NCBI GenBank assembly: GCA_019828565.1
Contig: JAHDYR010000005.1
Span: 719,342 to 783,341, forward strand
Direction of reading: 5' to 3'
From: Carpediemonas membranifera BICM
Taxonomy: Eukaryota; Protista; Fornicata
DNA: 64,000 nt
Within the stretch, counting starts at the first letter, position 1. The number at the start of each line of letters is the position of its first letter. The position numbers and the translations under genes are program-made. Shown piece by piece: positions 42,051 through 60,797 of the stretch. The notes beneath the pieces were generated by a model, which had not been told where the DNA came from, ran no database searches, and worked only from the letters and a program-made list of their open reading frames with translations.

Positions 42051-45000
42051 CTAAAGATCCTCCATCACGCTTACCTCATAGCTGTCCGGATTAGCGAGCT
42101 CGGCGAAGTCTCTCACAAACCGTGCGCAGTCCCGCGCAACTCCGATCTTCGCTGCCTTGTCGGCGAACTCGTTCAAGTTCCCCGCGTGTGCGGAGATCGT
42201 CTCGAATCTCAGCGCATGGCCCGCCCCAGTCGCGGCCTCGATGACACCTCGGGCGGTGTTCAAGTCGCGATCGGGCACTTTGAGCGTCTTCCCGTCCGTC
42301 TCGTACTGGACGAAGTCGAGTACGTCGTCGCTGTCGATATAAACCACCGCCGTTCTCCGGGTCGGTAAGGCCCGCAGGATGCCACACAGCGCCACTATAG
42401 CACCCAGCTCGGCCCTGTCAATGTGCTGCTCGGCCGCCCCGGGCTCTGCGAGGAGGGGGAGACAGACCATGCCCATACGGGCAAGGACGGCGGGGTCGTC
42501 GTCGATCTGTGACTCTTTGGGGATACGCTTGGCCCTCTCGCGTGTGGTCAGGAAGACACCGAGACCGGCCCGGGCGTGCGTCGTGCCGATGCCTGTGCAA
42601 GCTCCGTCAGTGTACACAACAAGGTCGCCCTCGGGCACGCTGGCAGGGAACCGGGGCAGCAGGCTGGGCTTGACGAGGATGGGGGGCTCGTACGGTAGCA
42701 GCTCGTACAGACGGACGACGTTGGCGGCAAGCTCATCCTTCGAGATGGGAGCGTCGTCGATGGATGCATGGCAGTAGGGGCAGAGCTGGACCGAGAAGAA
42801 GCCCGAGAAGAAGATGAGGGGGACAGCGGGGACGGTCATGTCCCTATCATCGGCGTACTCCATGTCGGGCGGTGCTACCAGACGGCATTGGGTGCAGCGT
42901 CGCGACAACAGGGGGTAGCCGCTGCACAGCCTGGCCAGGAGGTCTTCGCTGGCGGTATCGAGCCCAACCGGCGCTGCTTTCAAGCGGGCGTCTGCTCGGC
43001 GTAGCAGCTCGTCGCGAGGCACATCCTTATCGGACTTAACAACCCTCATCCCGTCCTGGGCCTTAGCAGTCTTCTGGACGGCCATGACGGCGTCGTTGAA
43101 AGGGCCGCGTACGTCACAGAGGCTCAGCATCCGTGTGACGTCCTTCATGGGGACCGGCGTGAAGATTCGGGCCAGACGCTTCAAGTCCTCGTCGGGCACC
43201 CAGGGCGCGTCGGCCGGTCTGGTGGGGGCGACGACCAGCTGCCAGGAGACGCTGCTGTCGTGGTCCATGGCAATGAACCGCGCCATGTCGTAGCCACCGG
43301 TGGATATCCGGCAGACGGTCGCTGGGCTATGCCGGGCCGCGTGCCAGGCCGTCGGGTTGGACTTCGCAGTGACGGCGTCTGTGTTGATGCCAGCGGCGCG
43401 CTTCAGGGACCGGGTCTGGCGGGCGTCCTGGCTGACAGTGTCGACAGCCGACTGTGTCGCCAGGAAGAGCATGACAGCGTCGTCGAGGGGGCGGGTGCTG
43501 GTCTCGCAGCCGTGGTTCGCGACATGAATCATCGTCGCGCGCTCTGCCATCTCCTTCAGGTGCTTGACGACCGGATAGTCGAACGACCCCGGGTGGTCCA
43601 GCTCGATGGCGTACTTCCTGGCGATGTGCCGCGCCTCGGGGCCCGAAGACAGGCCGCACTCGCACAGACGGCTCCATATGTTGTAGATCATGCCGCAGCG
43701 GTTCTCCATGGGCATCGCCTGCTGCATGGCCAGGGCGTATGTGGCGGCCCCGAATGACGGAACGGGCGTGAAGTAGTCTGCCGCCGGGAATAGCACGTGT
43801 GCATCCGGGCCAGCCTTGGAGCGCACTGCGGCGACCACCGCGGAGTTTGTCATGATGAAGACCTTGTCGCCGTCGAAGTCGCCCCCGTTCATCCTGCATA
43901 TCGCGGGAGGGGTCGATCGGTGTTTCTGTCTCGCGTGGGCGGAGAAGATCGCGACGTTCTTCATGCCCGAATACTGTGGCCTGTCGACGGCGTCCATGAG
44001 CACCCAGTCACCAGGGTGGGTGCTGGGCGATCGGGTCACGAGGACCGGCCCGACGACGGGCTTGTCCTCCCGGTAGGGGTGGAAGTAGATCTCGTAAGGG
44101 GCTAGCACGTCCGTCTCGGTCACGGCGGTGCCGGCGTTGCCGCTGGGAGTGAGCTCGAGTTGCGGGCACACGACGGCGAACGCGGTGTGGAGCCCTGTGA
44201 AGGGGTACTGCGGCTTCTTCTTCCCCTTCTTCTGTGGCCCGTCCGCCGCCTGTTTCTTCGGGTCCTCTGCCAGCCGACACCGCGCGGCAAATCTGTCGTG
44301 GACGACCTTCGCGATGGTGTGGAAGTGGAAGGGGGGCACCTGGCTGTTCCTCATCGTCGTCATGGCGTTGAAGAACAGGTTATCGTTGTCCTCGGAGCTG
44401 CCCTTCCGTTTGAACGAGATCGCCTGGACAGGTCCCCGCTGCTCGATGTCCTCGTCTGATGGCACCTGGTGCACGCCGTAGCGGGCACGGGAGCCCTTGA
44501 CCACCTCCCTGGCCAGCACGCTGACGGGCACACCGGCCCCCATGAGGCTATGGGCGAGCATGAGCCCCATCCCGACGCTCTTGCGAGGGATATGGTAGAC
44601 CTTGGCGCCTCTAAACGGATCTGAGCGGGCGGCCTCGAGCACCTGGAACATGAGACCGAACCGGCCCCTCTCCTGGTCCGGGGGGAGGTCCCACTTGACC
44701 TGACTGCGGCGGCAGACCATGGTGTTGGGGGGCAGGTCGTTGTGTCGGACCCACATACCCTTCATGCCCTTGAAGCGGGCTTGGACGGCGATAATGGAGG
44801 GGTCGCCAAGCACCTTGCACAGGTCTGGAGAGAAGTAGCCGCAGCCGTCGGTGGCGTTGAATGTGTGGCGCTTGGTCACGGCCGGCCCTTCTGCGGTACG
44901 GCGCCCATCGAGGGTCGCACCGTCAACCTCAATGCCACACTCGAACTCAATGTCGTCAATAACGATGACGTTGAGATTTGTAGGCATCTGCACGATGACC

Positions 45001-45572
45001 CCCGTCGAGAAGAGCAGCTCGACGCGCTTGTTGGCCTTCTTCCCGTTGCTCCGAGCGATGGCCCGTGCGTCCAGGCCGAGACGGGACTTCATCCAGTCCA
45101 GAGGGTGTTCTCCCTGGATCTCACCAACGAATATCACCTTTCCATCGTGTCTGAGCGCCTTCACCGTGATCGTGTCGCCGGTATCAGGGCGAGATGACGA
45201 CTTGACGCACACAGGATAGAGAGTGTCGTTGGGGTACGCCTCCTTCACCGCCTGGATGATCCCGTCGAGCTTTGTCTTCTCATTGCGTTCCAGGAGGTAC
45301 TCTACAACCAAGGTCGAGGGCGAAACTTTCGCGAGCATGGAAAAGAGACGACGAGCTTCGAAACGGTTCTCGCTGATTCTCTCTTCGTATGTAGACATGG
45401 GGATCTCACGGATCTTCTCCCCAATCTTATCAATACGGCACTCAATGGCACGCTTACTCCTGCCTAGGGCGTCTGCGATCTCCTTGATGCTTCTATTGTC
45501 ATTCTTCATCGCCATGAGCTTTTCTTCTTCTTCCTTGGTCCAGCGACGCAAGTGGTTTTCGGCGGGTGCCAT
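42051..45572 (-). CDS. Eukaryotic RNA-dependent RNA polymerase with N-terminal Myb/HTH-like domain and C-terminal RNase HI domain
   Basis: TDGCG, QARFKGMKGM, VTRSPSTHPGD, GGDFDGD; CTQC..CPYC; YTDGAC, RAELGAI, YIDS, HAGNLNEFADKAAK. Confidence 0.92.
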   Translation of the reverse strand: MAPAENHLRRWTKEEEEKLMAMKNDNRSIKEIADALGRSKRAIECRIDKIGEKIREIPMSTYEERISENRFEARRLFSMLAKVSPSTLVVEYLLERNEKTKLDGIIQAVKEAYPNDTLYPVCVKSSSRPDTGDTITVKALRHDGKVIFVGEIQGEHPLDWMKSRLGLDARAIARSNGKKANKRVELLFSTGVIVQMPTNLNVIVIDDIEFECGIEVDGATLDGRRTAEGPAVTKRHTFNATDGCGYFSPDLCKVLGDPSIIAVQARFKGMKGMWVRHNDLPPNTMVCRRSQVKWDLPPDQERGRFGLMFQVLEAARSDPFRGAKVYHIPRKSVGMGLMLAHSLMGAGVPVSVLAREVVKGSRARYGVHQVPSDEDIEQRGPVQAISFKRKGSSEDNDNLFFNAMTTMRNSQVPPFHFHTIAKVVHDRFAARCRLAEDPKKQAADGPQKKGKKKPQYPFTGLHTAFAVVCPQLELTPSGNAGTAVTETDVLAPYEIYFHPYREDKPVVGPVLVTRSPSTHPGDWVLMDAVDRPQYSGMKNVAIFSAHARQKHRSTPPAICRMNGGDFDGDKVFIMTNSAVVAAVRSKAGPDAHVLFPAADYFTPVPSFGAATYALAMQQAMPMENRCGMIYNIWSRLCECGLSSGPEARHIARKYAIELDHPGSFDYPVVKHLKEMAERATMIHVANHGCETSTRPLDDAVMLFLATQSAVDTVSQDARQTRSLKRAAGINTDAVTAKSNPTAWHAARHSPATVCRISTGGYDMARFIAMDHDSSVSWQLVVAPTRPADAPWVPDEDLKRLARIFTPVPMKDVTRMLSLCDVRGPFNDAVMAVQKTAKAQDGMRVVKSDKDVPRDELLRRADARLKAAPVGLDTASEDLLARLCSGYPLLSRRCTQCRLVAPPDMEYADDRDMTVPAVPLIFFSGFFSVQLCPYCHASIDDAPISKDELAANVVRLYELLPYEPPILVKPSLLPRFPASVPEGDLVVYTDGACTGIGTTHARAGLGVFLTTRERAKRIPKESQIDDDPAVLARMGMVCLPLLAEPGAAEQHIDRAELGAIVALCGILRALPTRRTAVVYIDSDDVLDFVQYETDGKTLKVPDRDLNTARGVIEAATGAGHALRFETISAHAGNLNEFADKAAKIGVARDCARFVRDFAELANPDSYEVSVMEDL

Positions 45573-47824: not shown

Positions 47825-49291
47825 ATGTTCAGATATGTGGATGTACTATCACTTCCTCAATACATAATCTCAGCGCTATTCTTCATAACTGCGACACTTC
47901 TTATTTTAGTCGCGGGACTTTTGCGGCTTGCCTTCCTCGTGAAAGAGCGATCAGCGGGAGAAACAAATGTGTATACGGCTGGATTTTGGGCCATCGGCAC
48001 ATCATTTTGCTTCGCGTCAACGATCCTTCTTGGCTTACGTGCCGAGCAACTGCTCTTCACCGCCGTCCTGTCCGGCCTCTTCTTCCTCTTCTTCGTCTGC
48101 GTCGTCATCTTCCACCCGAAGACCACCCGCTGCCTCTCCCGCATCACCCGCACCGCCCACCCCGTCGCCGCCCACTCACAGCCGCTCCAATGGAGCCAGA
48201 CCGGGTCCCCCTCGGCAACGACGAGCGCGGCCACCACCACACCGCCCTCCCACAGCATGACCATGCTCGGCATAAGCCCGGCAGTGCTGGTGGCCGCCGC
48301 GGTGATCGACATCCGCACAGACAGCGGCTTCTACCGCTCCCTCTCCATCGCGGCAGGCATCGTCGCTGGGCTGGTGTCCAACATCTTTGCCGTGGTCTAT
48401 TTCGTGCCCGTGTTGTTCCAGATGTACCTCAATCACAAGGTGGCCCGGTGGGACGTGTGGCACGCCGTCGCTGTCGTGCTCATCACCGTCCTGCTGCTCG
48501 TGGGCGTCGTTATCGGCACGCCCCTGTCACTAGATGAGTTCGTCTTCTACTGCATCATCCAGTCGCCGTTCGTAAGCTTCGTCGTAGTCAGTATGGCTAT
48601 TGAAATCGCCGTCCTGGCCGTCGCGATCAACATTAAGTCGAGACACGCCGTCCCCGTGGCAAAGCTCGAGGTCGCGCCCCTCCGTAAGTACGCTACCCGG
48701 CTTGAGGAGTTCGTCTCCATCGCCAGGGGGTTCTACGACGCCGGGCTCGTCCACGGGGTCGACCTCCGCGGCCTGCAGACCGACGTGCAGACCCAGACCG
48801 AGCATGTCGTCGCCCTCGCCAGCCTCGCCCATAGCATCGCTGAGCTAGACACCATCGCGGACCGGCGACGCGTGCTCGATGAACTGTGCGAGCTGGGGCA
48901 AGCCGTGCTCAGCGTCGAGGCCCGTATCGAGACGCTTCGGGATCTAGAGGTGTGGTCCGCACGCCCGCCGATCCCGTCGGTCGAGGCGGAGCTCGTGCTC
49001 GCGTCTAACAGCCACACGAGCCTGGTGACGCAGGTGTCGACGCTGATGACGACGGCGTTCAACCTGAATGAGACCAACTGCCAGCTCTCGTTCAAGGTGC
49101 GGGATATCCAGCGCATCATCAGCGCCGGCCAGGTCTTCGCCCGGGACGACGTCCAGGTGTGGCTGTCCGAACGGGCCGCCGTGGAGCGGGCCGAGGCCCT
49201 CATCCAGGCGGGGGACCTCACAGGCGCCCAGCGGATGGCCAGTGACTACGACACAATCAAGATCTTCACGGATGTGGGGGCTAGCGCATAG
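47825..49291 (+). CDS. Hypothetical multi-pass membrane protein with helical C-terminal domain
   Basis: 488-aa ORF with about 7 hydrophobic segments in the N-terminal half. Confidence 0.7.
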   Translation: MFRYVDVLSLPQYIISALFFITATLLILVAGLLRLAFLVKERSAGETNVYTAGFWAIGTSFCFASTILLGLRAEQLLFTAVLSGLFFLFFVCVVIFHPKTTRCLSRITRTAHPVAAHSQPLQWSQTGSPSATTSAATTTPPSHSMTMLGISPAVLVAAAVIDIRTDSGFYRSLSIAAGIVAGLVSNIFAVVYFVPVLFQMYLNHKVARWDVWHAVAVVLITVLLLVGVVIGTPLSLDEFVFYCIIQSPFVSFVVVSMAIEIAVLAVAINIKSRHAVPVAKLEVAPLRKYATRLEEFVSIARGFYDAGLVHGVDLRGLQTDVQTQTEHVVALASLAHSIAELDTIADRRRVLDELCELGQAVLSVEARIETLRDLEVWSARPPIPSVEAELVLASNSHTSLVTQVSTLMTTAFNLNETNCQLSFKVRDIQRIISAGQVFARDDVQVWLSERAAVERAEALIQAGDLTGAQRMASDYDTIKIFTDVGASA

Positions 49292-55961: not shown

Positions 55962-57040
55962 ATGACTGCTATCGGAATCGACTTAGGCACCACATACTCC
56001 TGCGTTGGCGTGTTCATGAACGACCGCGTCGAGATCATCGCCAACGACCAGGGCAACCGCACCACACCCTCATACGTCGCCTTCAACGAGGACGAGCGCC
56101 TCATCGGCGAGGCCGCGAAGAACCAGACGGCGATGAACCCGACCAACACAGTCTTCGACGCGAAGCGCCTCATCGGACGGCGCTTCAACGACCGCGAGGT
56201 CCGGGCCGACATGGGCCACTGGCCGTTCAAGGTCGTCGCGGGCGCGAGCGACAAGCCGGCCGTCCAGGTGCAGCACAAGGGCGAGACCCGCACCTTCCAG
56301 GTCGAGGAGATCTCGGGCATGGTCCTGCAGAAGATGAAGGGAGACCGCCGAGGCCTACCTCGGCACGCCCGTCAGCAAGGCCGTCATCACGGTCCCCGCG
56401 TACTTCAACGACTCGCAGCGCCAGGCCACGAAGGACGCCGGCCAGATCGCGGGCCTCGAGGTCCTCCGCATCATCAACGAGCCGACCGCCGCGGCGATCG
56501 CGTACGGGCTCGACAACAAGTCGGCCGCGGAGAAGAACGTCCTGATCTTCGACCTCGGCGGCGGCACGTTCGACGTCTCGCTGCTCACCATCGACGAGGG
56601 CATCTTCGAGGTCAAGGCGACCGCGGGCGACACGCACCTCGGCGGCGAGGACTTCGACAACCGCATGGTCAACCACTTCGTGACCGAGTTCAAGCGCAAG
56701 CACAAGATGGACATCAGCGGCAACGCCCGCGCGATGCACCGTCTGCGCACGGCCTGCGAGCGCGCCAAGCGCACGCTCTCGTCGTCGACCCAGGCCGCGA
56801 TCGAGATCGACTCGCTCTACGAGGGCGTCGACTTCTTCACGAACATCACGCGCGCCCGCTTCGAGGACCTCTGCGGCGACCTCTTCCGCGGCTGCATCGA
56901 CCCCGTCCAGCGCGTGCTCACCGACGCGAAGCTCGACAAGACCAAGATCCACGAGATCGTGCTCGTCGGCGGGTCAACCCGCATCCCCAAGGTGCAGCAG
57001 CTGCTCAAGGACTTCTTCAACGGCAAGGAGCCCAGCAAGA

Positions 57041-57071
<31 letters not shown>

Positions 57072-57882
57072 CGCCGCCGTTCAGGCCGCCATCCTCGCGG
57101 GCGACAAGTCCGAGAAGGTCTCCGACCTCCTCCTGCTCGACGTCACGCCCCTCTCGCTCGGCATCGAGACCGCCGGCGGCGTGATGACGACGCTCATCAA
57201 GCGCAACACGACGATCCCCGCGCACGCCAAGGAGACGTTCTCGACCTTCGCCGACAACCAGCCCGCCGTGACTATCCAGGTCTTCGAGGGCGAGCGCGCC
57301 CGCACGCGCGACTGCAACAAGCTCGGCACGTTCGACCTGACCGGCATCCCGCCCGCGCCCCGCGGCGTCCCGAAGATCGAGGTGTCGTTCGACATCGACG
57401 CCAACGGCATCCTCCAGGTCACCGCCGAGGACAAGAGCTCGGGCAACCGCCAGCAGATCACGATCACCAACGACTCCGGCCGCCTCTCCAAGGACGACAT
57501 CGAGCGCATGGTCGCCGACGCGGAGCGGTTCAAGGCCGACGACGAGAAGGTGCGCGAGAAGGTCGAGGCGCGCAACGGCCTCGAGAACTTCGCCTACTCC
57601 CTCCGCAACACCATCGAGGACGAGAAGTTCAAGGACAAGATCTCCGCCGAGGACAAGGACAAGCTCGACGCCGAGATCAAGAACGTCATGAGCTGGCTCG
57701 ACACCCACGTCGACGCCGAGAAGGAGGAGTTCGAGGCCAAGCGCAAGGAGCTCGAGCAGGTCTCGACACCCATCATGACCAAGTTCTACGCCGAGGGCGC
57801 GCCGCAGGGCATGCCCGACATGGGCGGGGCGCCTGGCGCGACCCCATCGGGCGCCGGCCCCACGGTCGAGGAGCTCGACTGA
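55962..57882 (+). CDS. HSP70: Cytosolic Hsp70 (one apparent +1 G near 56340)
   Basis: [20 protein letters not shown]-terminal GPTVEELD. Confidence 0.95.
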
Positions 57883-58399
57883 GCATGCAGACGGACAGTT
57901 TATTAAACAGCACACTGAATTCTGATCATTTACGATATTTACCGTATTATATGGTTAACTACGACTGGCCGGTTTTGATTTCTGACTCTCACCCGTCTGG
58001 GGAGCTACAGTCGGCACATCCCCTAGATCTGTAAGCTAACTTACTCGATCTGCCAACTAGCGTAAGTAAAAATAGAAGCTTTGCAGCCCTTTACCTTACC
58101 TTACCTTACGCCTGGCTAGTAAGGGCCAATTTACCTGTGGGTGGCGTCCTCGGGAGACTGAGGCGCCTTACCGTTGATGATCTGATCCTCATCAGTTGAA
58201 AACGAAACACCAACTATGGCCGCCAATGCGGCGACCTCCGCAACCGCAAGCAAAAGGTAAAGTTTTAAGGTTACATGGTACACCTGAATAGTTAGAAGCA
58301 AAAAAGGCACTGCATCTGCTTCACAAGAGCGACGACAACGTATTATTGGCACAGCATCATTTACCACAGACTGAAAACCTAATTATCCGCTCGGATCCT

Positions 58400-58472
58400 G
58401 GTTCCATGGTGTAATTGGTTAGCACTTTGGGTTTTGATCCCAACAATCAGAGTTCGATTCTCTGTGGAACCA
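58400..58472 (+). tRNA. tRNA-Gln(TTG)
   Basis: Acceptor ggttcca/tggaacc, anticodon arm ttggg-ttTTGat-cccaa, T-arm gttcgattc, downstream T5 run. Confidence 0.95.
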
Positions 58473-58876
58473 AATTTTTCAGCCAAAGTCAGAACGCCAT
58501 AAACTGCACGGAGTCATAAGTCAATCAGTTGATGCATTTGGGAGTACTCCGCGCCTCCGCGTATAGGCTACTAGAAGCCCTGACGATTCAGCGAGGCATT
58601 AGCCCGGGGCATCCCAACTCGTGATTTCAGGGGCAACCACCTTCGAAAAATGGGCACGACCCAGCGCAACGAGTTGGAACGCTATCGCCGGGAGATTGGC
58701 TTAATCGCGAGAGCTATACGCGCGCTAGCGATCTAGGGGATGTGCCGACTGTAGCTCCCCAGACGGGTGAGAGTCAGAAATCAAAACCGGCCAGTCGTAG
58801 TTAACCATATAATACGGTAAATATCGTAAATGATCAGAATTCAGTGTGCTGTTTAATAAACTGTCCGTCTGCATGC

Positions 58877-59688
58877 TCAGTCGAGCTCCTCGACCGTGGG
58901 GCCGGCGCCCGATGGGGTCGCGCCAGGCGCCCCGCCCATGTCGGGCATGCCCTGCGGCGCGCCCTCGGCGTAGAACTTGGTCATGATGGGTGTCGAGACC
59001 TGCTCGAGCTCCTTGCGCTTGGCCTCGAACTCCTCCTTCTCGGCGTCGACGTGGGTGTCGAGCCAGCTCATGACGTTCTTGATCTCGGCGTCGAGCTTGT
59101 CCTTGTCCTCGGCGGAGATCTTGTCCTTGAACTTCTCGTCCTCGATGGTGTTGCGGAGGGAGTAGGCGAAGTTCTCGAGGCCGTTGCGCGCCTCGACCTT
59201 CTCGCGCACCTTCTCGTCGTCGGCCTTGAACCGCTCCGCGTCGGCGACCATGCGCTCGATGTCGTCCTTGGAGAGGCGGCCGGAGTCGTTGGTGATCGTG
59301 ATCTGCTGGCGGTTGCCCGAGCTCTTGTCCTCGGCGGTGACCTGGAGGATGCCGTTGGCGTCGATGTCGAACGACACCTCGATCTTCGGGACGCCGCGGG
59401 GCGCGGGCGGGATGCCGGTCAGGTCGAACGTGCCGAGCTTGTTGCAGTCGCGCGTGCGGGCGCGCTCGCCCTCGAAGACCTGGATAGTCACGGCGGGCTG
59501 GTTGTCGGCGAAGGTCGAGAACGTCTCCCTTGGCGTGCGCGGGGATCGTCGTGTTGCGCTTGATGAGCGTCGTCATCACGCCGCCGGCGGTCTCGATGCC
59601 GAGCGAGAGGGGCGTGACGTCGAGCAGGAGGAGGTCGGAGACCTTCTCGGACTTGTCGCCCGCGAGGATGGCGGCCTGAACGGCGGCG

Positions 59689-59719
<31 letters not shown>

Positions 59720-60797
59720 TCTTGCTGGGCTCCTTGCCGTTGAAGAAGTCCTTGAGCAGCTGCTGCACCTTGGGGATGCGGGTTGACCCGCCGACGAGCA
59801 CGATCTCGTGGATCTTGGTCTTGTCGAGCTTCGCGTCGGTGAGCACGCGCTGGACGGGGTCGATGCAGCCGCGGAAGAGGTCGCCGCAGAGGTCCTCGAA
59901 GCGGGCGCGCGTGATGTTCGTGAAGAAGTCGACGCCCTCGTAGAGCGAGTCGATCTCGATCGCGGCCTGGGTCGACGACGAGAGCGTGCGCTTGGCGCGC
60001 TCGCAGGCCGTGCGCAGACGGTGCATCGCGCGGGCGTTGCCGCTGATGTCCATCTTGTGCTTGCGCTTGAACTCGGTCACGAAGTGGTTGACCATGCGGT
60101 TGTCGAAGTCCTCGCCGCCGAGGTGCGTGTCGCCCGCGGTCGCCTTGACCTCGAAGATGCCCTCGTCGATGGTGAGCAGCGAGACGTCGAACGTGCCGCC
60201 GCCGAGGTCGAAGATCAGGACGTTCTTCTCCGCGGCCGACTTGTTGTCGAGCCCGTACGCGATCGCCGCGGCGGTCGGCTCGTTGATGATGCGGAGGACC
60301 TCGAGGCCCGCGATCTGGCCGGCGTCCTTCGTGGCCTGGCGCTGCGAGTCGTTGAAGTACGCGGGGACCGTGATGACGGCCTTGCTGACGGGCTTGCCGA
60401 GGTAGGCCTCGGCGGTCTCCTTCATCTTCTGCAGGACCATGCCCGAGATCTCCTCGACCTGGAAGGTGCGGGTCTCGCCCTTGTGCTGCACCTGGACGGC
60501 CGGCTTGTCGCTCGCGCCCGCGACGACCTTGAACGGCCAGTGGCCCATGTCGGCCCGGACCTCGCGGTCGTTGAAGCGCCGTCCGATGAGGCGCTTCGCG
60601 TCGAAGACTGTGTTGGTCGGGTTCATCGCCGTCTGGTTCTTCGCGGCCTCGCCGATGAGGCGCTCGTCCTCGTTGAAGGCGACGTATGAGGGTGTGGTGC
60701 GGTTGCCCTGGTCGTTGGCGATGATCTCGACGCGGTCGTTCATGAACACGCCAACGCAGGAGTATGTGGTGCCTAAGTCGATTCCGATAGCAGTCAT
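58877..60797 (-). CDS. HSP70: Cytosolic Hsp70, second copy (one apparent +1 base near 59528)
   Basis: Near-identical inverted copy of 55962-57882. Confidence 0.95.

What the first reader, a model, noticed from the sequence alone, without database searches (positions are those of the whole stretch)
42051..45572. RdRP fused to an intact RNase HI domain and an N-terminal Myb-like domain
Seen: one uninterrupted 1173-aa ORF with a Myb/HTH-like start, RdRP core with DFDGD, CxxC..CxxC, then RNase H with all four acidic catalytic positions plus His (~42130-42630). Established: cellular RdRPs make dsRNA for RNAi, and RNase H cleaves RNA in RNA:DNA hybrids. I do not know this fusion. Inference: an enzyme that recognises reverse-transcription intermediates or R-loops and turns the cut RNA into dsRNA/siRNA precursors, that is, an anti-retroelement sensor-amplifier.
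Basis: partly seen in the sequence, partly recalled or inferred. Interest (0 to 1): 0.87.

Follow-up and report, generated by a model that had tools for sequence, protein, structure and literature searches.

The report
RNA polymerase fused to RNase H
The genome's only RNAi-type RNA-copying polymerase gene is fused in one reading frame to a DNA-binding-like head and an apparently intact RNase H tail, a combination I found in no other eukaryotic protein and one that suggests small-RNA production coupled to RNA:DNA hybrids.

Summary
Window 42051-45572 (-) is one 1173-codon ORF with host-like codon bias throughout. It encodes four parts:
- an N-terminal three-helix HTH, only weakly Myb-like;
- a divergent but complete cell-type RdRP with the GGDFDGD catalytic loop, whose model matches QDE-1 and RDR2;
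- a CxxC...CxxC element;
- a type 1 RNase H with D989, E1055, D1080, H1129 and D1138 in place, but a shortened basic protrusion and a 25-residue insert.

Genome statistics match Carpediemonas membranifera (24.2 Mb, 69 contigs). The gene is single copy and the genome's only RdRP. The genome also holds two Argonaute/Piwi genes and two bacterial-type RNase HI genes. I detected no RNase III catalytic domain.

A search of 1.84 billion representative proteins found no relative closer than E 1e-10, and none of the 145 hits carries an RNase H. The only precedent I found is a literature remark on cyanobacterial RdRP-like enzymes combined with RNase H.

Neither transcription nor read support across the domain junction could be tested. 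The proposed function, cutting RNA in RNA:DNA hybrids to feed RNA copying and the Argonautes, is inferred. The scan's earlier notes hold no report of this fusion on other DNA.

The parts
42051..45572 (-). Whole gene: 1173-aa ORF including the stop codon, intronless, single copy (G000:C6:761395-764913)
   Evidence: The frame is open, with 0 internal stops against 36 and 30 in the other frames. GC3 is about 0.8 throughout. There is one place in the genome.
45402..45548 (-). N-terminal helix-turn-helix (residues 9-57), Myb/SANT-like or sigma-70 region 4-like; putative nucleic-acid-binding head
   Evidence: Pfam hits are sub-threshold: HTH_38 E 2.7e-4 and Myb_DNA-bind_6 E 0.014. phmmer finds Myb/HTH-repeat proteins at E 1.5e-9. 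AF2 predicts helices 13-24, 29-36 and 40-55, with pLDDT 76-85 over residues 11-50.
43503..45137 (-). Cell-type (two-barrel) RNA-dependent RNA polymerase region, about residues 146-690
   Evidence: PF05183 matches in two stretches, residues about 176-313 and 486-586. The AF2 model has pLDDT above 90 at 190-210, 240-290 and 490-540. Foldseek matches QDE-1 at E 7e-16 and RDR2 at E 1.6e-13 over 620-730 columns.
43866..43886 (-). Catalytic loop GGDFDGD (residues 563-569; D565, D567, D569)
   Evidence: G563, D565, D567, G568 and D569 are invariant or nearly invariant in the alignments with 94 and with 16 RdRPs.
42771..42896 (-). CxxC (893-896) ... CxxC (931-934): putative four-Cys zinc element in the linker between polymerase and RNase H
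   Evidence: There is no Pfam hit, and AF2 confidence is below 50, so the fold is unknown.
42141..42626 (-). Type 1 RNase H domain (residues 983-1144) with D989, E1055, D1080, H1129 and D1138. It has a 25-residue insert before helix A and a shortened basic protrusion that lacks the conserved Trp residues.
   Evidence: PF00075 scores above its cut-off. AF2 gives pLDDT 70-94, and Foldseek's top matches are human RNase H1 and E. coli RNase HI with TM 0.65-0.74.

Best explanation
This is a genuine, single-copy nuclear gene of a Carpediemonas membranifera-type genome and its only RdRP.

Shown:
- One continuous coding frame encodes an HTH head, a divergent but complete QDE-1/RDR-type two-barrel RNA polymerase with its Asp triad, a four-Cys linker element, and a type 1 RNase H with all catalytic residues.
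- The genome also has two Argonaute/Piwi genes, and I detected no RNase III catalytic domain.

Inferred mechanism:
- The enzyme works next to DNA, on RNA:DNA hybrids.
- Like QDE-1, the polymerase can copy single-stranded DNA or aberrant RNA. On DNA this yields RNA:DNA hybrids, which are a dead end for dsRNA synthesis.
- The RNase H in cis nicks the RNA strand of such hybrids, whether they are its own products or R-loops. This frees short RNAs with 5'-phosphate and 3'-OH ends.
- The polymerase then copies these RNAs into dsRNA, or they pass to the Argonautes.
- The shortened basic protrusion suggests that the RNase H relies on the neighbouring domains to hold its substrate.
- The pathway may partly replace a missing Dicer.
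For: - The gene is real and coding throughout, and is single copy and the only PF05183 hit in the genome.
- RdRP: Pfam hit, catalytic loop and fold.
- RNase H: Pfam hit, DEDD plus His, and fold.
- HTH head.
- Two intact Argonaute/Piwi ORFs.
- No RNase III catalytic domain with three profiles.
- QDE-1 copies ssDNA, and its products are mostly DNA/RNA hybrids that block dsRNA formation, while short RNAs that dissociate are copied into dsRNA (PMC2950127). Solved QDE-1 complexes with a DNA template are among the top structural matches.
- A review infers RNA-DNA hybrid function for prokaryotic RdRP-like enzymes combined with RNase H (PMC3417536).
Against: - There is no evidence of transcription or protein. 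The runs found were low-coverage contigs, not on record as RNA, and none bridges 42569-42780.
- No orthologue exists in the databases, so conservation and selection cannot be assessed.
- DNA-templated activity is shown for QDE-1, not for this very divergent enzyme.
- RNase H cleavage could just as well destroy the polymerase's DNA-templated products.
- The absence of Dicer is a weak negative: the PAZ profile also found nothing although two Argonautes exist.
- The AF2 models were built on family alignments and lean towards those folds.
Confidence: 0.4

Rival explanations
1. One reading: an anti-retroelement sensor-amplifier. The RNase H recognises RNA:cDNA intermediates of reverse transcription (LINE and gypsy elements are abundant here). 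It cuts the element's RNA, and the RdRP converts the fragments into dsRNA or siRNA precursors against that element.
For: The window holds LINE and gypsy reverse-transcriptase ORFs. RNase H and RdRP are both intact. Earlier unverified scan notes describe transposons in this genome that carry Piwi gene fragments, which hints at an active conflict between small RNAs and transposons.
Against: Nothing ties the enzyme to cytoplasmic or retroelement intermediates rather than to chromosomal hybrids. The HTH head points to DNA or chromatin. The position of the gene beside a TE nest is not functional evidence, because it is flanked by ordinary host genes. No Dicer-type nuclease was detected to process dsRNA.
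Confidence: 0.2
2. A DNA replication or repair role rather than silencing. The published genome analysis of C. membranifera found no ORC or Cdc6 and proposed origin-independent, recombination-based replication mediated by RNA:DNA hybrids. In that setting, a DNA-binding two-barrel RNA polymerase with RNase H could make or trim RNA primers or R-loops that start or restart DNA synthesis.
For: The paper proposes hybrid-mediated replication and notes loss of eukaryotic RNase H1 (PMC8516963). A review argues that prokaryotic RdRP-like enzymes arose as primase-like enzymes of selfish elements (PMC3417536). The protein has an HTH head.
Against: This is entirely circumstantial. All characterised eukaryotic PF05183 enzymes act in small-RNA pathways (my own knowledge), and Argonautes are present. 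The paper does not mention this gene.
Confidence: 0.1
3. A young or neutral chimeric gene. The RNase H tail (or the whole gene) is not functionally coupled to the polymerase. Despite conserved motifs it may be inactive on hybrids because of the altered substrate-binding surface.
For: It is an orphan in one genome with no orthologue. The basic protrusion is shortened and lacks the conserved Trp residues, the TTNNRMEL motif is changed, and there is a 25-residue insert. A bacterial RNase HI profile scores it at only 8.5 bits.
Against: All five catalytic positions are retained in a very divergent sequence, which argues for constraint. Codon bias in the tail and the linker equals that of host genes, so this is not a recent capture. 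No resident retroelement RNase H of this type exists as a donor, since the genome has only three PF00075 hits.
Confidence: 0.15
4. An artefact: a misassembly or an indel error has joined two neighbouring genes.
For: No independent contig bridges 42569-42780. The same window holds two near-identical HSP70 copies that differ by single-G indels, so homopolymer errors in the assembly are possible.
Against: An indel error breaks frames rather than creating 1173 open codons. The linker, residues 690-985, has 0 stops in frame against 8 and 8 in the other frames, and GC3 of 0.75-0.87, so it is coding and not intergenic. The eight listed independent contig pieces per run are 100% identical to the window. 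The published assembly is described as highly contiguous with deep long-read and short-read coverage (PMC8516963).
Confidence: 0.05

Closest known systems
Neurospora crassa QDE-1 (cell-type two-barrel RdRP/DdRP; PDB 2j7n, 7y7p-7y7t)
   Same: It is the best structural match (Foldseek E 7e-16 over about 660-730 columns), has the same DxDGD catalytic loop, and belongs to Pfam PF05183. QDE-1 copies ssDNA as well as RNA and produces DNA/RNA hybrids (PMC2950127), which is the context a fused RNase H would act in.
   Different: Sequence identity is only about 16%. QDE-1 has no HTH head, no Cys4 linker and no RNase H, and relies on RPA and the QDE-3 helicase to deal with hybrids, and on Dicer for dicing.
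Plant RDR2 (PDB 7roz, 7eu0; coupled to Pol IV)
   Same: It shares the fold and the catalytic loop. RDR2 takes an RNA 3' end directly from an RNA:DNA hybrid in Pol IV (my own knowledge). This is a functional analogue of hybrid-coupled RNA copying.
   Different: In plants the coupling is by protein-protein contact with a separate polymerase and no nuclease domain is fused. The sequences are very distant (E 4e-5).
Prokaryotic RdRP-like two-barrel polymerases combined with RNase H in cyanobacteria (Iyer & Aravind 2011, as cited in PMC3417536)
   Same: This is the same pair of activities in one protein or locus. The authors likewise infer action on RNA-DNA hybrids.
   Different: Those belong to bacterial selfish elements. 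I could not retrieve them. No RNase H-bearing relative appears among the 145 nearest proteins out of 1.84 billion, nor in phage, plasmid or viral collections. The present fusion therefore looks independent and sits on a eukaryote-type RdRP.
Type 1 RNase H (human RNase H1 catalytic domain 2qk9/8swc; E. coli RNase HI)
   Same: Pfam PF00075 scores above its cut-off, DEDD plus His are in place, and the fold matches at TM 0.65-0.74.
   Different: There is no hybrid-binding domain. The basic protrusion is shortened and lacks the conserved Trp residues, there is a 25-residue insert, and the sequence is about equally distant from every RNase H compared. It is not a recent copy of the genome's two bacterial-type RNase HI genes.

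Membership tests
Eukaryotic cell-type RdRP (Pfam PF05183; QDE-1/RDR/EGO-1 family) | Profile match above the curated cut-off | tested here: met
   101.8 bits against a cut-off of 23.8, in two stretches. The six-frame search of the genome gives the same two stretches.
Eukaryotic cell-type RdRP (Pfam PF05183; QDE-1/RDR/EGO-1 family) | Catalytic DxDGD loop with three Asp | tested here: met
   GGDFDGD at residues 563-569. D565, D567, G568 and D569 are invariant or nearly invariant in alignments A3 and A4.
Eukaryotic cell-type RdRP (Pfam PF05183; QDE-1/RDR/EGO-1 family) | Two double-psi beta-barrel fold like QDE-1 and RDR2 | tested here: met
   AF2 model with pTM 0.68 and barrels at pLDDT above 90. 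Foldseek matches QDE-1 at E 7e-16 and RDR2 at E 1.6e-13. Caveat: the model was built on an RdRP alignment.
Eukaryotic cell-type RdRP (Pfam PF05183; QDE-1/RDR/EGO-1 family) | Template-dependent RNA synthesis | not testable with these tools
   Needs recombinant protein.
Type 1 RNase H (Pfam PF00075) | Profile match above the curated cut-off | tested here: met
   32.6 bits on the whole protein and 38.8 bits on the domain alone, against a cut-off of 25.8. It is one of three PF00075 hits in the genome.
Type 1 RNase H (Pfam PF00075) | Catalytic Asp-Glu-Asp-Asp plus the His of the flexible loop | tested here: met
   D989, E1055, D1080, D1138 and H1129 lie in invariant columns of 123 sequences.
Type 1 RNase H (Pfam PF00075) | RNase H fold | tested here: met
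   AF2 gives pLDDT 70-94 over the domain. Foldseek's top matches are human RNase H1 and E. coli RNase HI with TM 0.65-0.74. Caveat: the model was built on an RNase HI alignment.
Type 1 RNase H (Pfam PF00075) | Basic protrusion / DNA-strand-binding Trp cluster of the cellular enzymes | tested here: not met
   The segment is shorter and the conserved KGW..W..W residues are absent. Some bona fide RNases H also lack it (my own knowledge), so this lowers 'typical cellular RNase HI', not 'RNase H'.
Eukaryotic RNase H1 (HBD + linker + catalytic domain) | N-terminal hybrid-binding domain (PF01693) | tested here: not met
   There is no PF01693 hit anywhere in the protein.
Myb/SANT DNA-binding domain | Profile match above the cut-off, and the regularly spaced aromatic residues | tested here: inconclusive
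   Myb_DNA-bind_6 scores 16.0 bits against a cut-off of 22.9, and HTH_38 scores 21.1 against 27. Only the first Trp (W11) is present. A three-helix bundle is predicted, and the nearest sequences are Myb/sigma-r4-like HTH repeat proteins from metagenomes and a Bacillus phage.
Prokaryotic RdRP-like + RNase H (cyanobacterial selfish elements) | Specific sequence relationship to those proteins | tested here: not met
   No RNase H-bearing protein is among the 145 hits of the exhaustive search. There are no hits in phages, plasmids or viral contigs. The bacterial proteins themselves could not be fetched.

The most novel reading that the evidence does not exclude
In a eukaryote for which the published analysis found no ORC or Cdc6, and in which I could detect no Dicer-type RNase III, this single enzyme may be a self-contained machine working on RNA:DNA hybrids. 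It could make Argonaute-ready small RNAs without Dicer: RNase H cutting leaves 5'-phosphate ends. Alternatively, it could make and trim the RNA of R-loops that prime origin-independent DNA replication.
Probability: 0.1. Interest if true: 0.92.

Novelty: new variant of a known kind. Interest (0 to 1): 0.62.

Why it matters
Eukaryotic RdRPs are known as stand-alone amplifiers of silencing RNAs. How their templates are chosen and how they are coupled to DNA is a standing question, answered so far by partner proteins such as Pol IV with RDR2, or RPA and QDE-3 with QDE-1. A natural fusion of the polymerase to an RNase H and a DNA-binding-like head would put the hybrid-processing step in the same polypeptide, giving a simple system for testing hybrid-coupled small-RNA synthesis. 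The host is also of special interest. The published genome analysis found no canonical replication-origin machinery, notes that eukaryotic RNase H1 is missing, and proposes replication through RNA:DNA hybrids. In my searches the genome shows no Dicer-type nuclease.

Tried and rejected
- **Close homologues.** The word-index search of 5.8 billion proteins returned only the protein itself, and the RNase H domain alone returned nothing. The ESM Atlas feature searches gave no usable hit. The metagenome locus scan found only an HTH look-alike.
- **Encoding contigs.** The look-up of the protein was not on record.
- **Bacterial genome scans.** The viral contig scan and tblastn against phages and plasmids found nothing. 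I therefore could not retrieve the cyanobacterial RdRP-like plus RNase H proteins. The primary paper (PMC3769190) is not held.
- **Reads.** The two holder runs are the same low-coverage contig set filed twice. Their pieces are 100% identical to the window, but none bridges 42569-42780 and none is on record as RNA. Junction and expression therefore remain untested.
- **Origin of the RNase H.** phmmer against 120 RNase HI/H1 sequences gave uniformly weak scores of 11-16 bits, with no preference for sequences with or without a hybrid-binding domain. Cellular versus retroelement origin is unresolved. A recent duplication of the genome's own RNase HI genes is rejected, and so is capture from a resident retroelement.
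- **Host lineage.** A red-algal host was considered and dropped after a negative phycobilisome-linker search.
- **Not run.** No complex prediction was run, because the parts are one chain. There was no InterPro-wide architecture query, so a rare RdRP plus RNase H elsewhere in eukaryotes is not excluded.
Full report
**Observation.** Window 42051-45572 on the minus strand is one ATG-to-stop frame of 1173 codons. It has no internal stop, against 36 and 30 stops in the other two frames of that strand. From base composition, the chance of such a frame is about 3.5e-15, and the longest open frame in 200 shuffles of the surrounding 12 kb was 395 codons. GC at third codon positions is 0.63-0.89 in every 100-codon block. 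A codon-use comparison puts all four parts (head, catalytic core, linker, RNase H tail) with the neighbouring host genes rather than with the LINE and gypsy ORFs of the window. The linker, residues 690-985, has 0 stops in frame against 8 and 8 out of frame, so there is no hidden intergenic gap.

**Domains.** Pfam gives RdRP PF05183 at E 5e-29 in two stretches, and RNase_H PF00075 above its cut-off at residues 983-1144.
- *Polymerase.* The loop GGDFDGD lies at residues 563-569, and its Asp and Gly residues are invariant or nearly so in alignments with 94 and with 16 RdRPs. An AlphaFold2 model of residues 1-880, built on that alignment, has pTM 0.68 and high confidence in both barrels. It matches QDE-1 (E 7e-16) and RDR2 (E 1.6e-13) over 620-730 columns.
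- *RNase H.* D989, E1055, D1080, H1129 and D1138 fall in columns that are invariant in 123 sequences. The model of the domain (pLDDT 70-94) matches human RNase H1 and E. coli RNase HI at TM 0.65-0.74. Both models lean on the family alignments they were given.
- *How the RNase H differs from cellular enzymes.* It has a 25-residue insert before helix A, a changed TTNNRMEL motif, and a shortened basic protrusion without the conserved Trp residues. There is no hybrid-binding domain.
- *Linker.* Two CxxC motifs lie at 893-896 and 931-934, in a region of unknown fold.
- *Head.* It is a predicted three-helix HTH. Its nearest sequences are Myb/sigma-r4-like repeat proteins from metagenomes and a Bacillus phage. 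All Pfam HTH and Myb matches are sub-threshold, so 'Myb-like' is only weakly supported.

**Genome and context.** The assembly has 24,237,836 bases in 69 contigs. An earlier scan note named the organism as Carpediemonas. I checked that lead against the literature. Table 1 of PMC8516963 lists C. membranifera at 24.2 Mb, 69 contigs and 57.1% GC. The paper reports that it lacks eukaryotic RNase H1 and has two prokaryote-type copies. That fits the two canonical RNase HI genes I found, whose best relatives are bacterial.

The fusion gene is single copy and is the only PF05183 hit in the genome. Its RNase H has no close paralogue. It is flanked by ordinary host genes: an RCC1-like gene converging on its 3' end and a synaptobrevin/tomosyn-like gene diverging from its 5' end. 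It is therefore a host gene beside a TE nest, not part of an element.

The genome encodes two intact Argonaute/Piwi ORFs. Three RNase III profiles found no catalytic domain. The only matches were to the dsRNA-binding part of the bacterial model, on another contig. This is a weak negative, because the PAZ profile also found nothing.

**Relatives.** An exhaustive HMMER search of 1.84 billion representative proteins found nothing closer than E 1e-10. Nearly all hits cover only the catalytic core (about residues 473-680) or the HTH head. The named top hits are nematode, chytrid and basidiomycete RdRPs, so there is no specific affinity. None of the 145 hits contains an RNase H, tested both with the fusion's own domain and with an RNase HI profile. 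The nearest ESM Atlas structure clusters carry RdRP families only. No paper in the library contains both 'Carpediemonas' and 'RdRP', and the genome paper and its supplements do not mention RdRP, Dicer or Argonaute.

One precedent exists. A review states that RdRP-like enzymes of cyanobacterial selfish elements may be combined with an RNase H domain, and infers function on RNA-DNA hybrids (PMC3417536). I could not retrieve those proteins. Since none appears among the relatives, the present fusion looks independent.

**Junction and expression.** The only runs found are one low-coverage contig set filed twice. Its pieces are 100% identical to the window, but none bridges 42569-42780 and none is on record as RNA. 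The third, the architecture survey, was only partly done.

**Mechanism.**
- *Shown:* both catalytic centres are intact in a very divergent sequence, the coding signal is continuous, and Argonautes are present.
- *Established elsewhere:* QDE-1 copies ssDNA efficiently. Its products are mostly DNA/RNA hybrids that prevent dsRNA formation unless RPA or a helicase intervenes, and short RNAs that fall off are copied into dsRNA (PMC2950127).
- *Inferred:* the HTH head brings the enzyme to DNA. The RNase H nicks the RNA strand of hybrids, either its own DNA-templated products or R-loops. The released RNAs, with 5'-phosphate and 3'-OH ends, are copied or handed to the Argonautes. This could compensate for the apparent lack of Dicer. 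I put this at 0.4.
A role in the hybrid-mediated, origin-independent replication proposed for this organism is possible but purely circumstantial (0.1). An uncoupled or inactive tail (0.15) and an artefact (0.05) remain.

**Verdict.** The fusion is a new variant of a known kind: a eukaryotic RdRP with a new domain combination that has a prokaryotic parallel. It is seen so far in a single genome and has no expression data. Interest is moderate to high because of the host's unusual nucleic-acid biology.

Noticed in passing
window 55962-58034 (+) and 58725-60797 (-), flanking tRNA-Gln at 58399-58473: Two inverted, near-identical HSP70 copies show 6 differences in 2074 aligned columns. Each carries one extra G in a GG/GGG run at a different place (columns 377 and 1269). 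The Pfam HSP70 match therefore stops at residue 127 in one copy and residue 422 in the other, although both frames stay open for 690 codons. These are either paired frameshifted genes or homopolymer errors of the assembly.
   Followed up: partly
G000 contig C63 (loci L011-L014) and C19: Several ORFs of 235-377 aa match only the dsRNA-binding part (positions 145-215) of the bacterial RNase III model, and three of them score almost identically. This looks like a small family of dsRBD proteins with no RNase III catalytic domain.
   Followed up: no
whole genome G000: The genome has two Argonaute/Piwi genes and one RdRP, but three profiles found no RNase III catalytic domain (PF00636, PF14622, TIGR02191). 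Dicer may be lost or very divergent in this lineage.
   Followed up: partly
L005:1201-2439 (-) and L006:1363-2268 (-): The two bacterial-type RNase HI paralogues share a conserved N-terminal helix motif (AQLSR.DQ.LA..LLQ) and an acidic-aromatic C-terminal tail (DD.FW[ED]) that are not part of the RNase H fold. These may be eukaryotic add-ons for partner binding.
   Followed up: no
L010:3001-3126 (metagenome contig SDBU01043377.1): This stretch is 48% identical to residues 9-50 of the HTH head. It was the only metagenomic match to any part of the protein.
   Followed up: no
window 47825-49291 (+): This 488-aa ORF has host-like codon bias (GC3 0.81) and no Pfam family.
   Followed up: no
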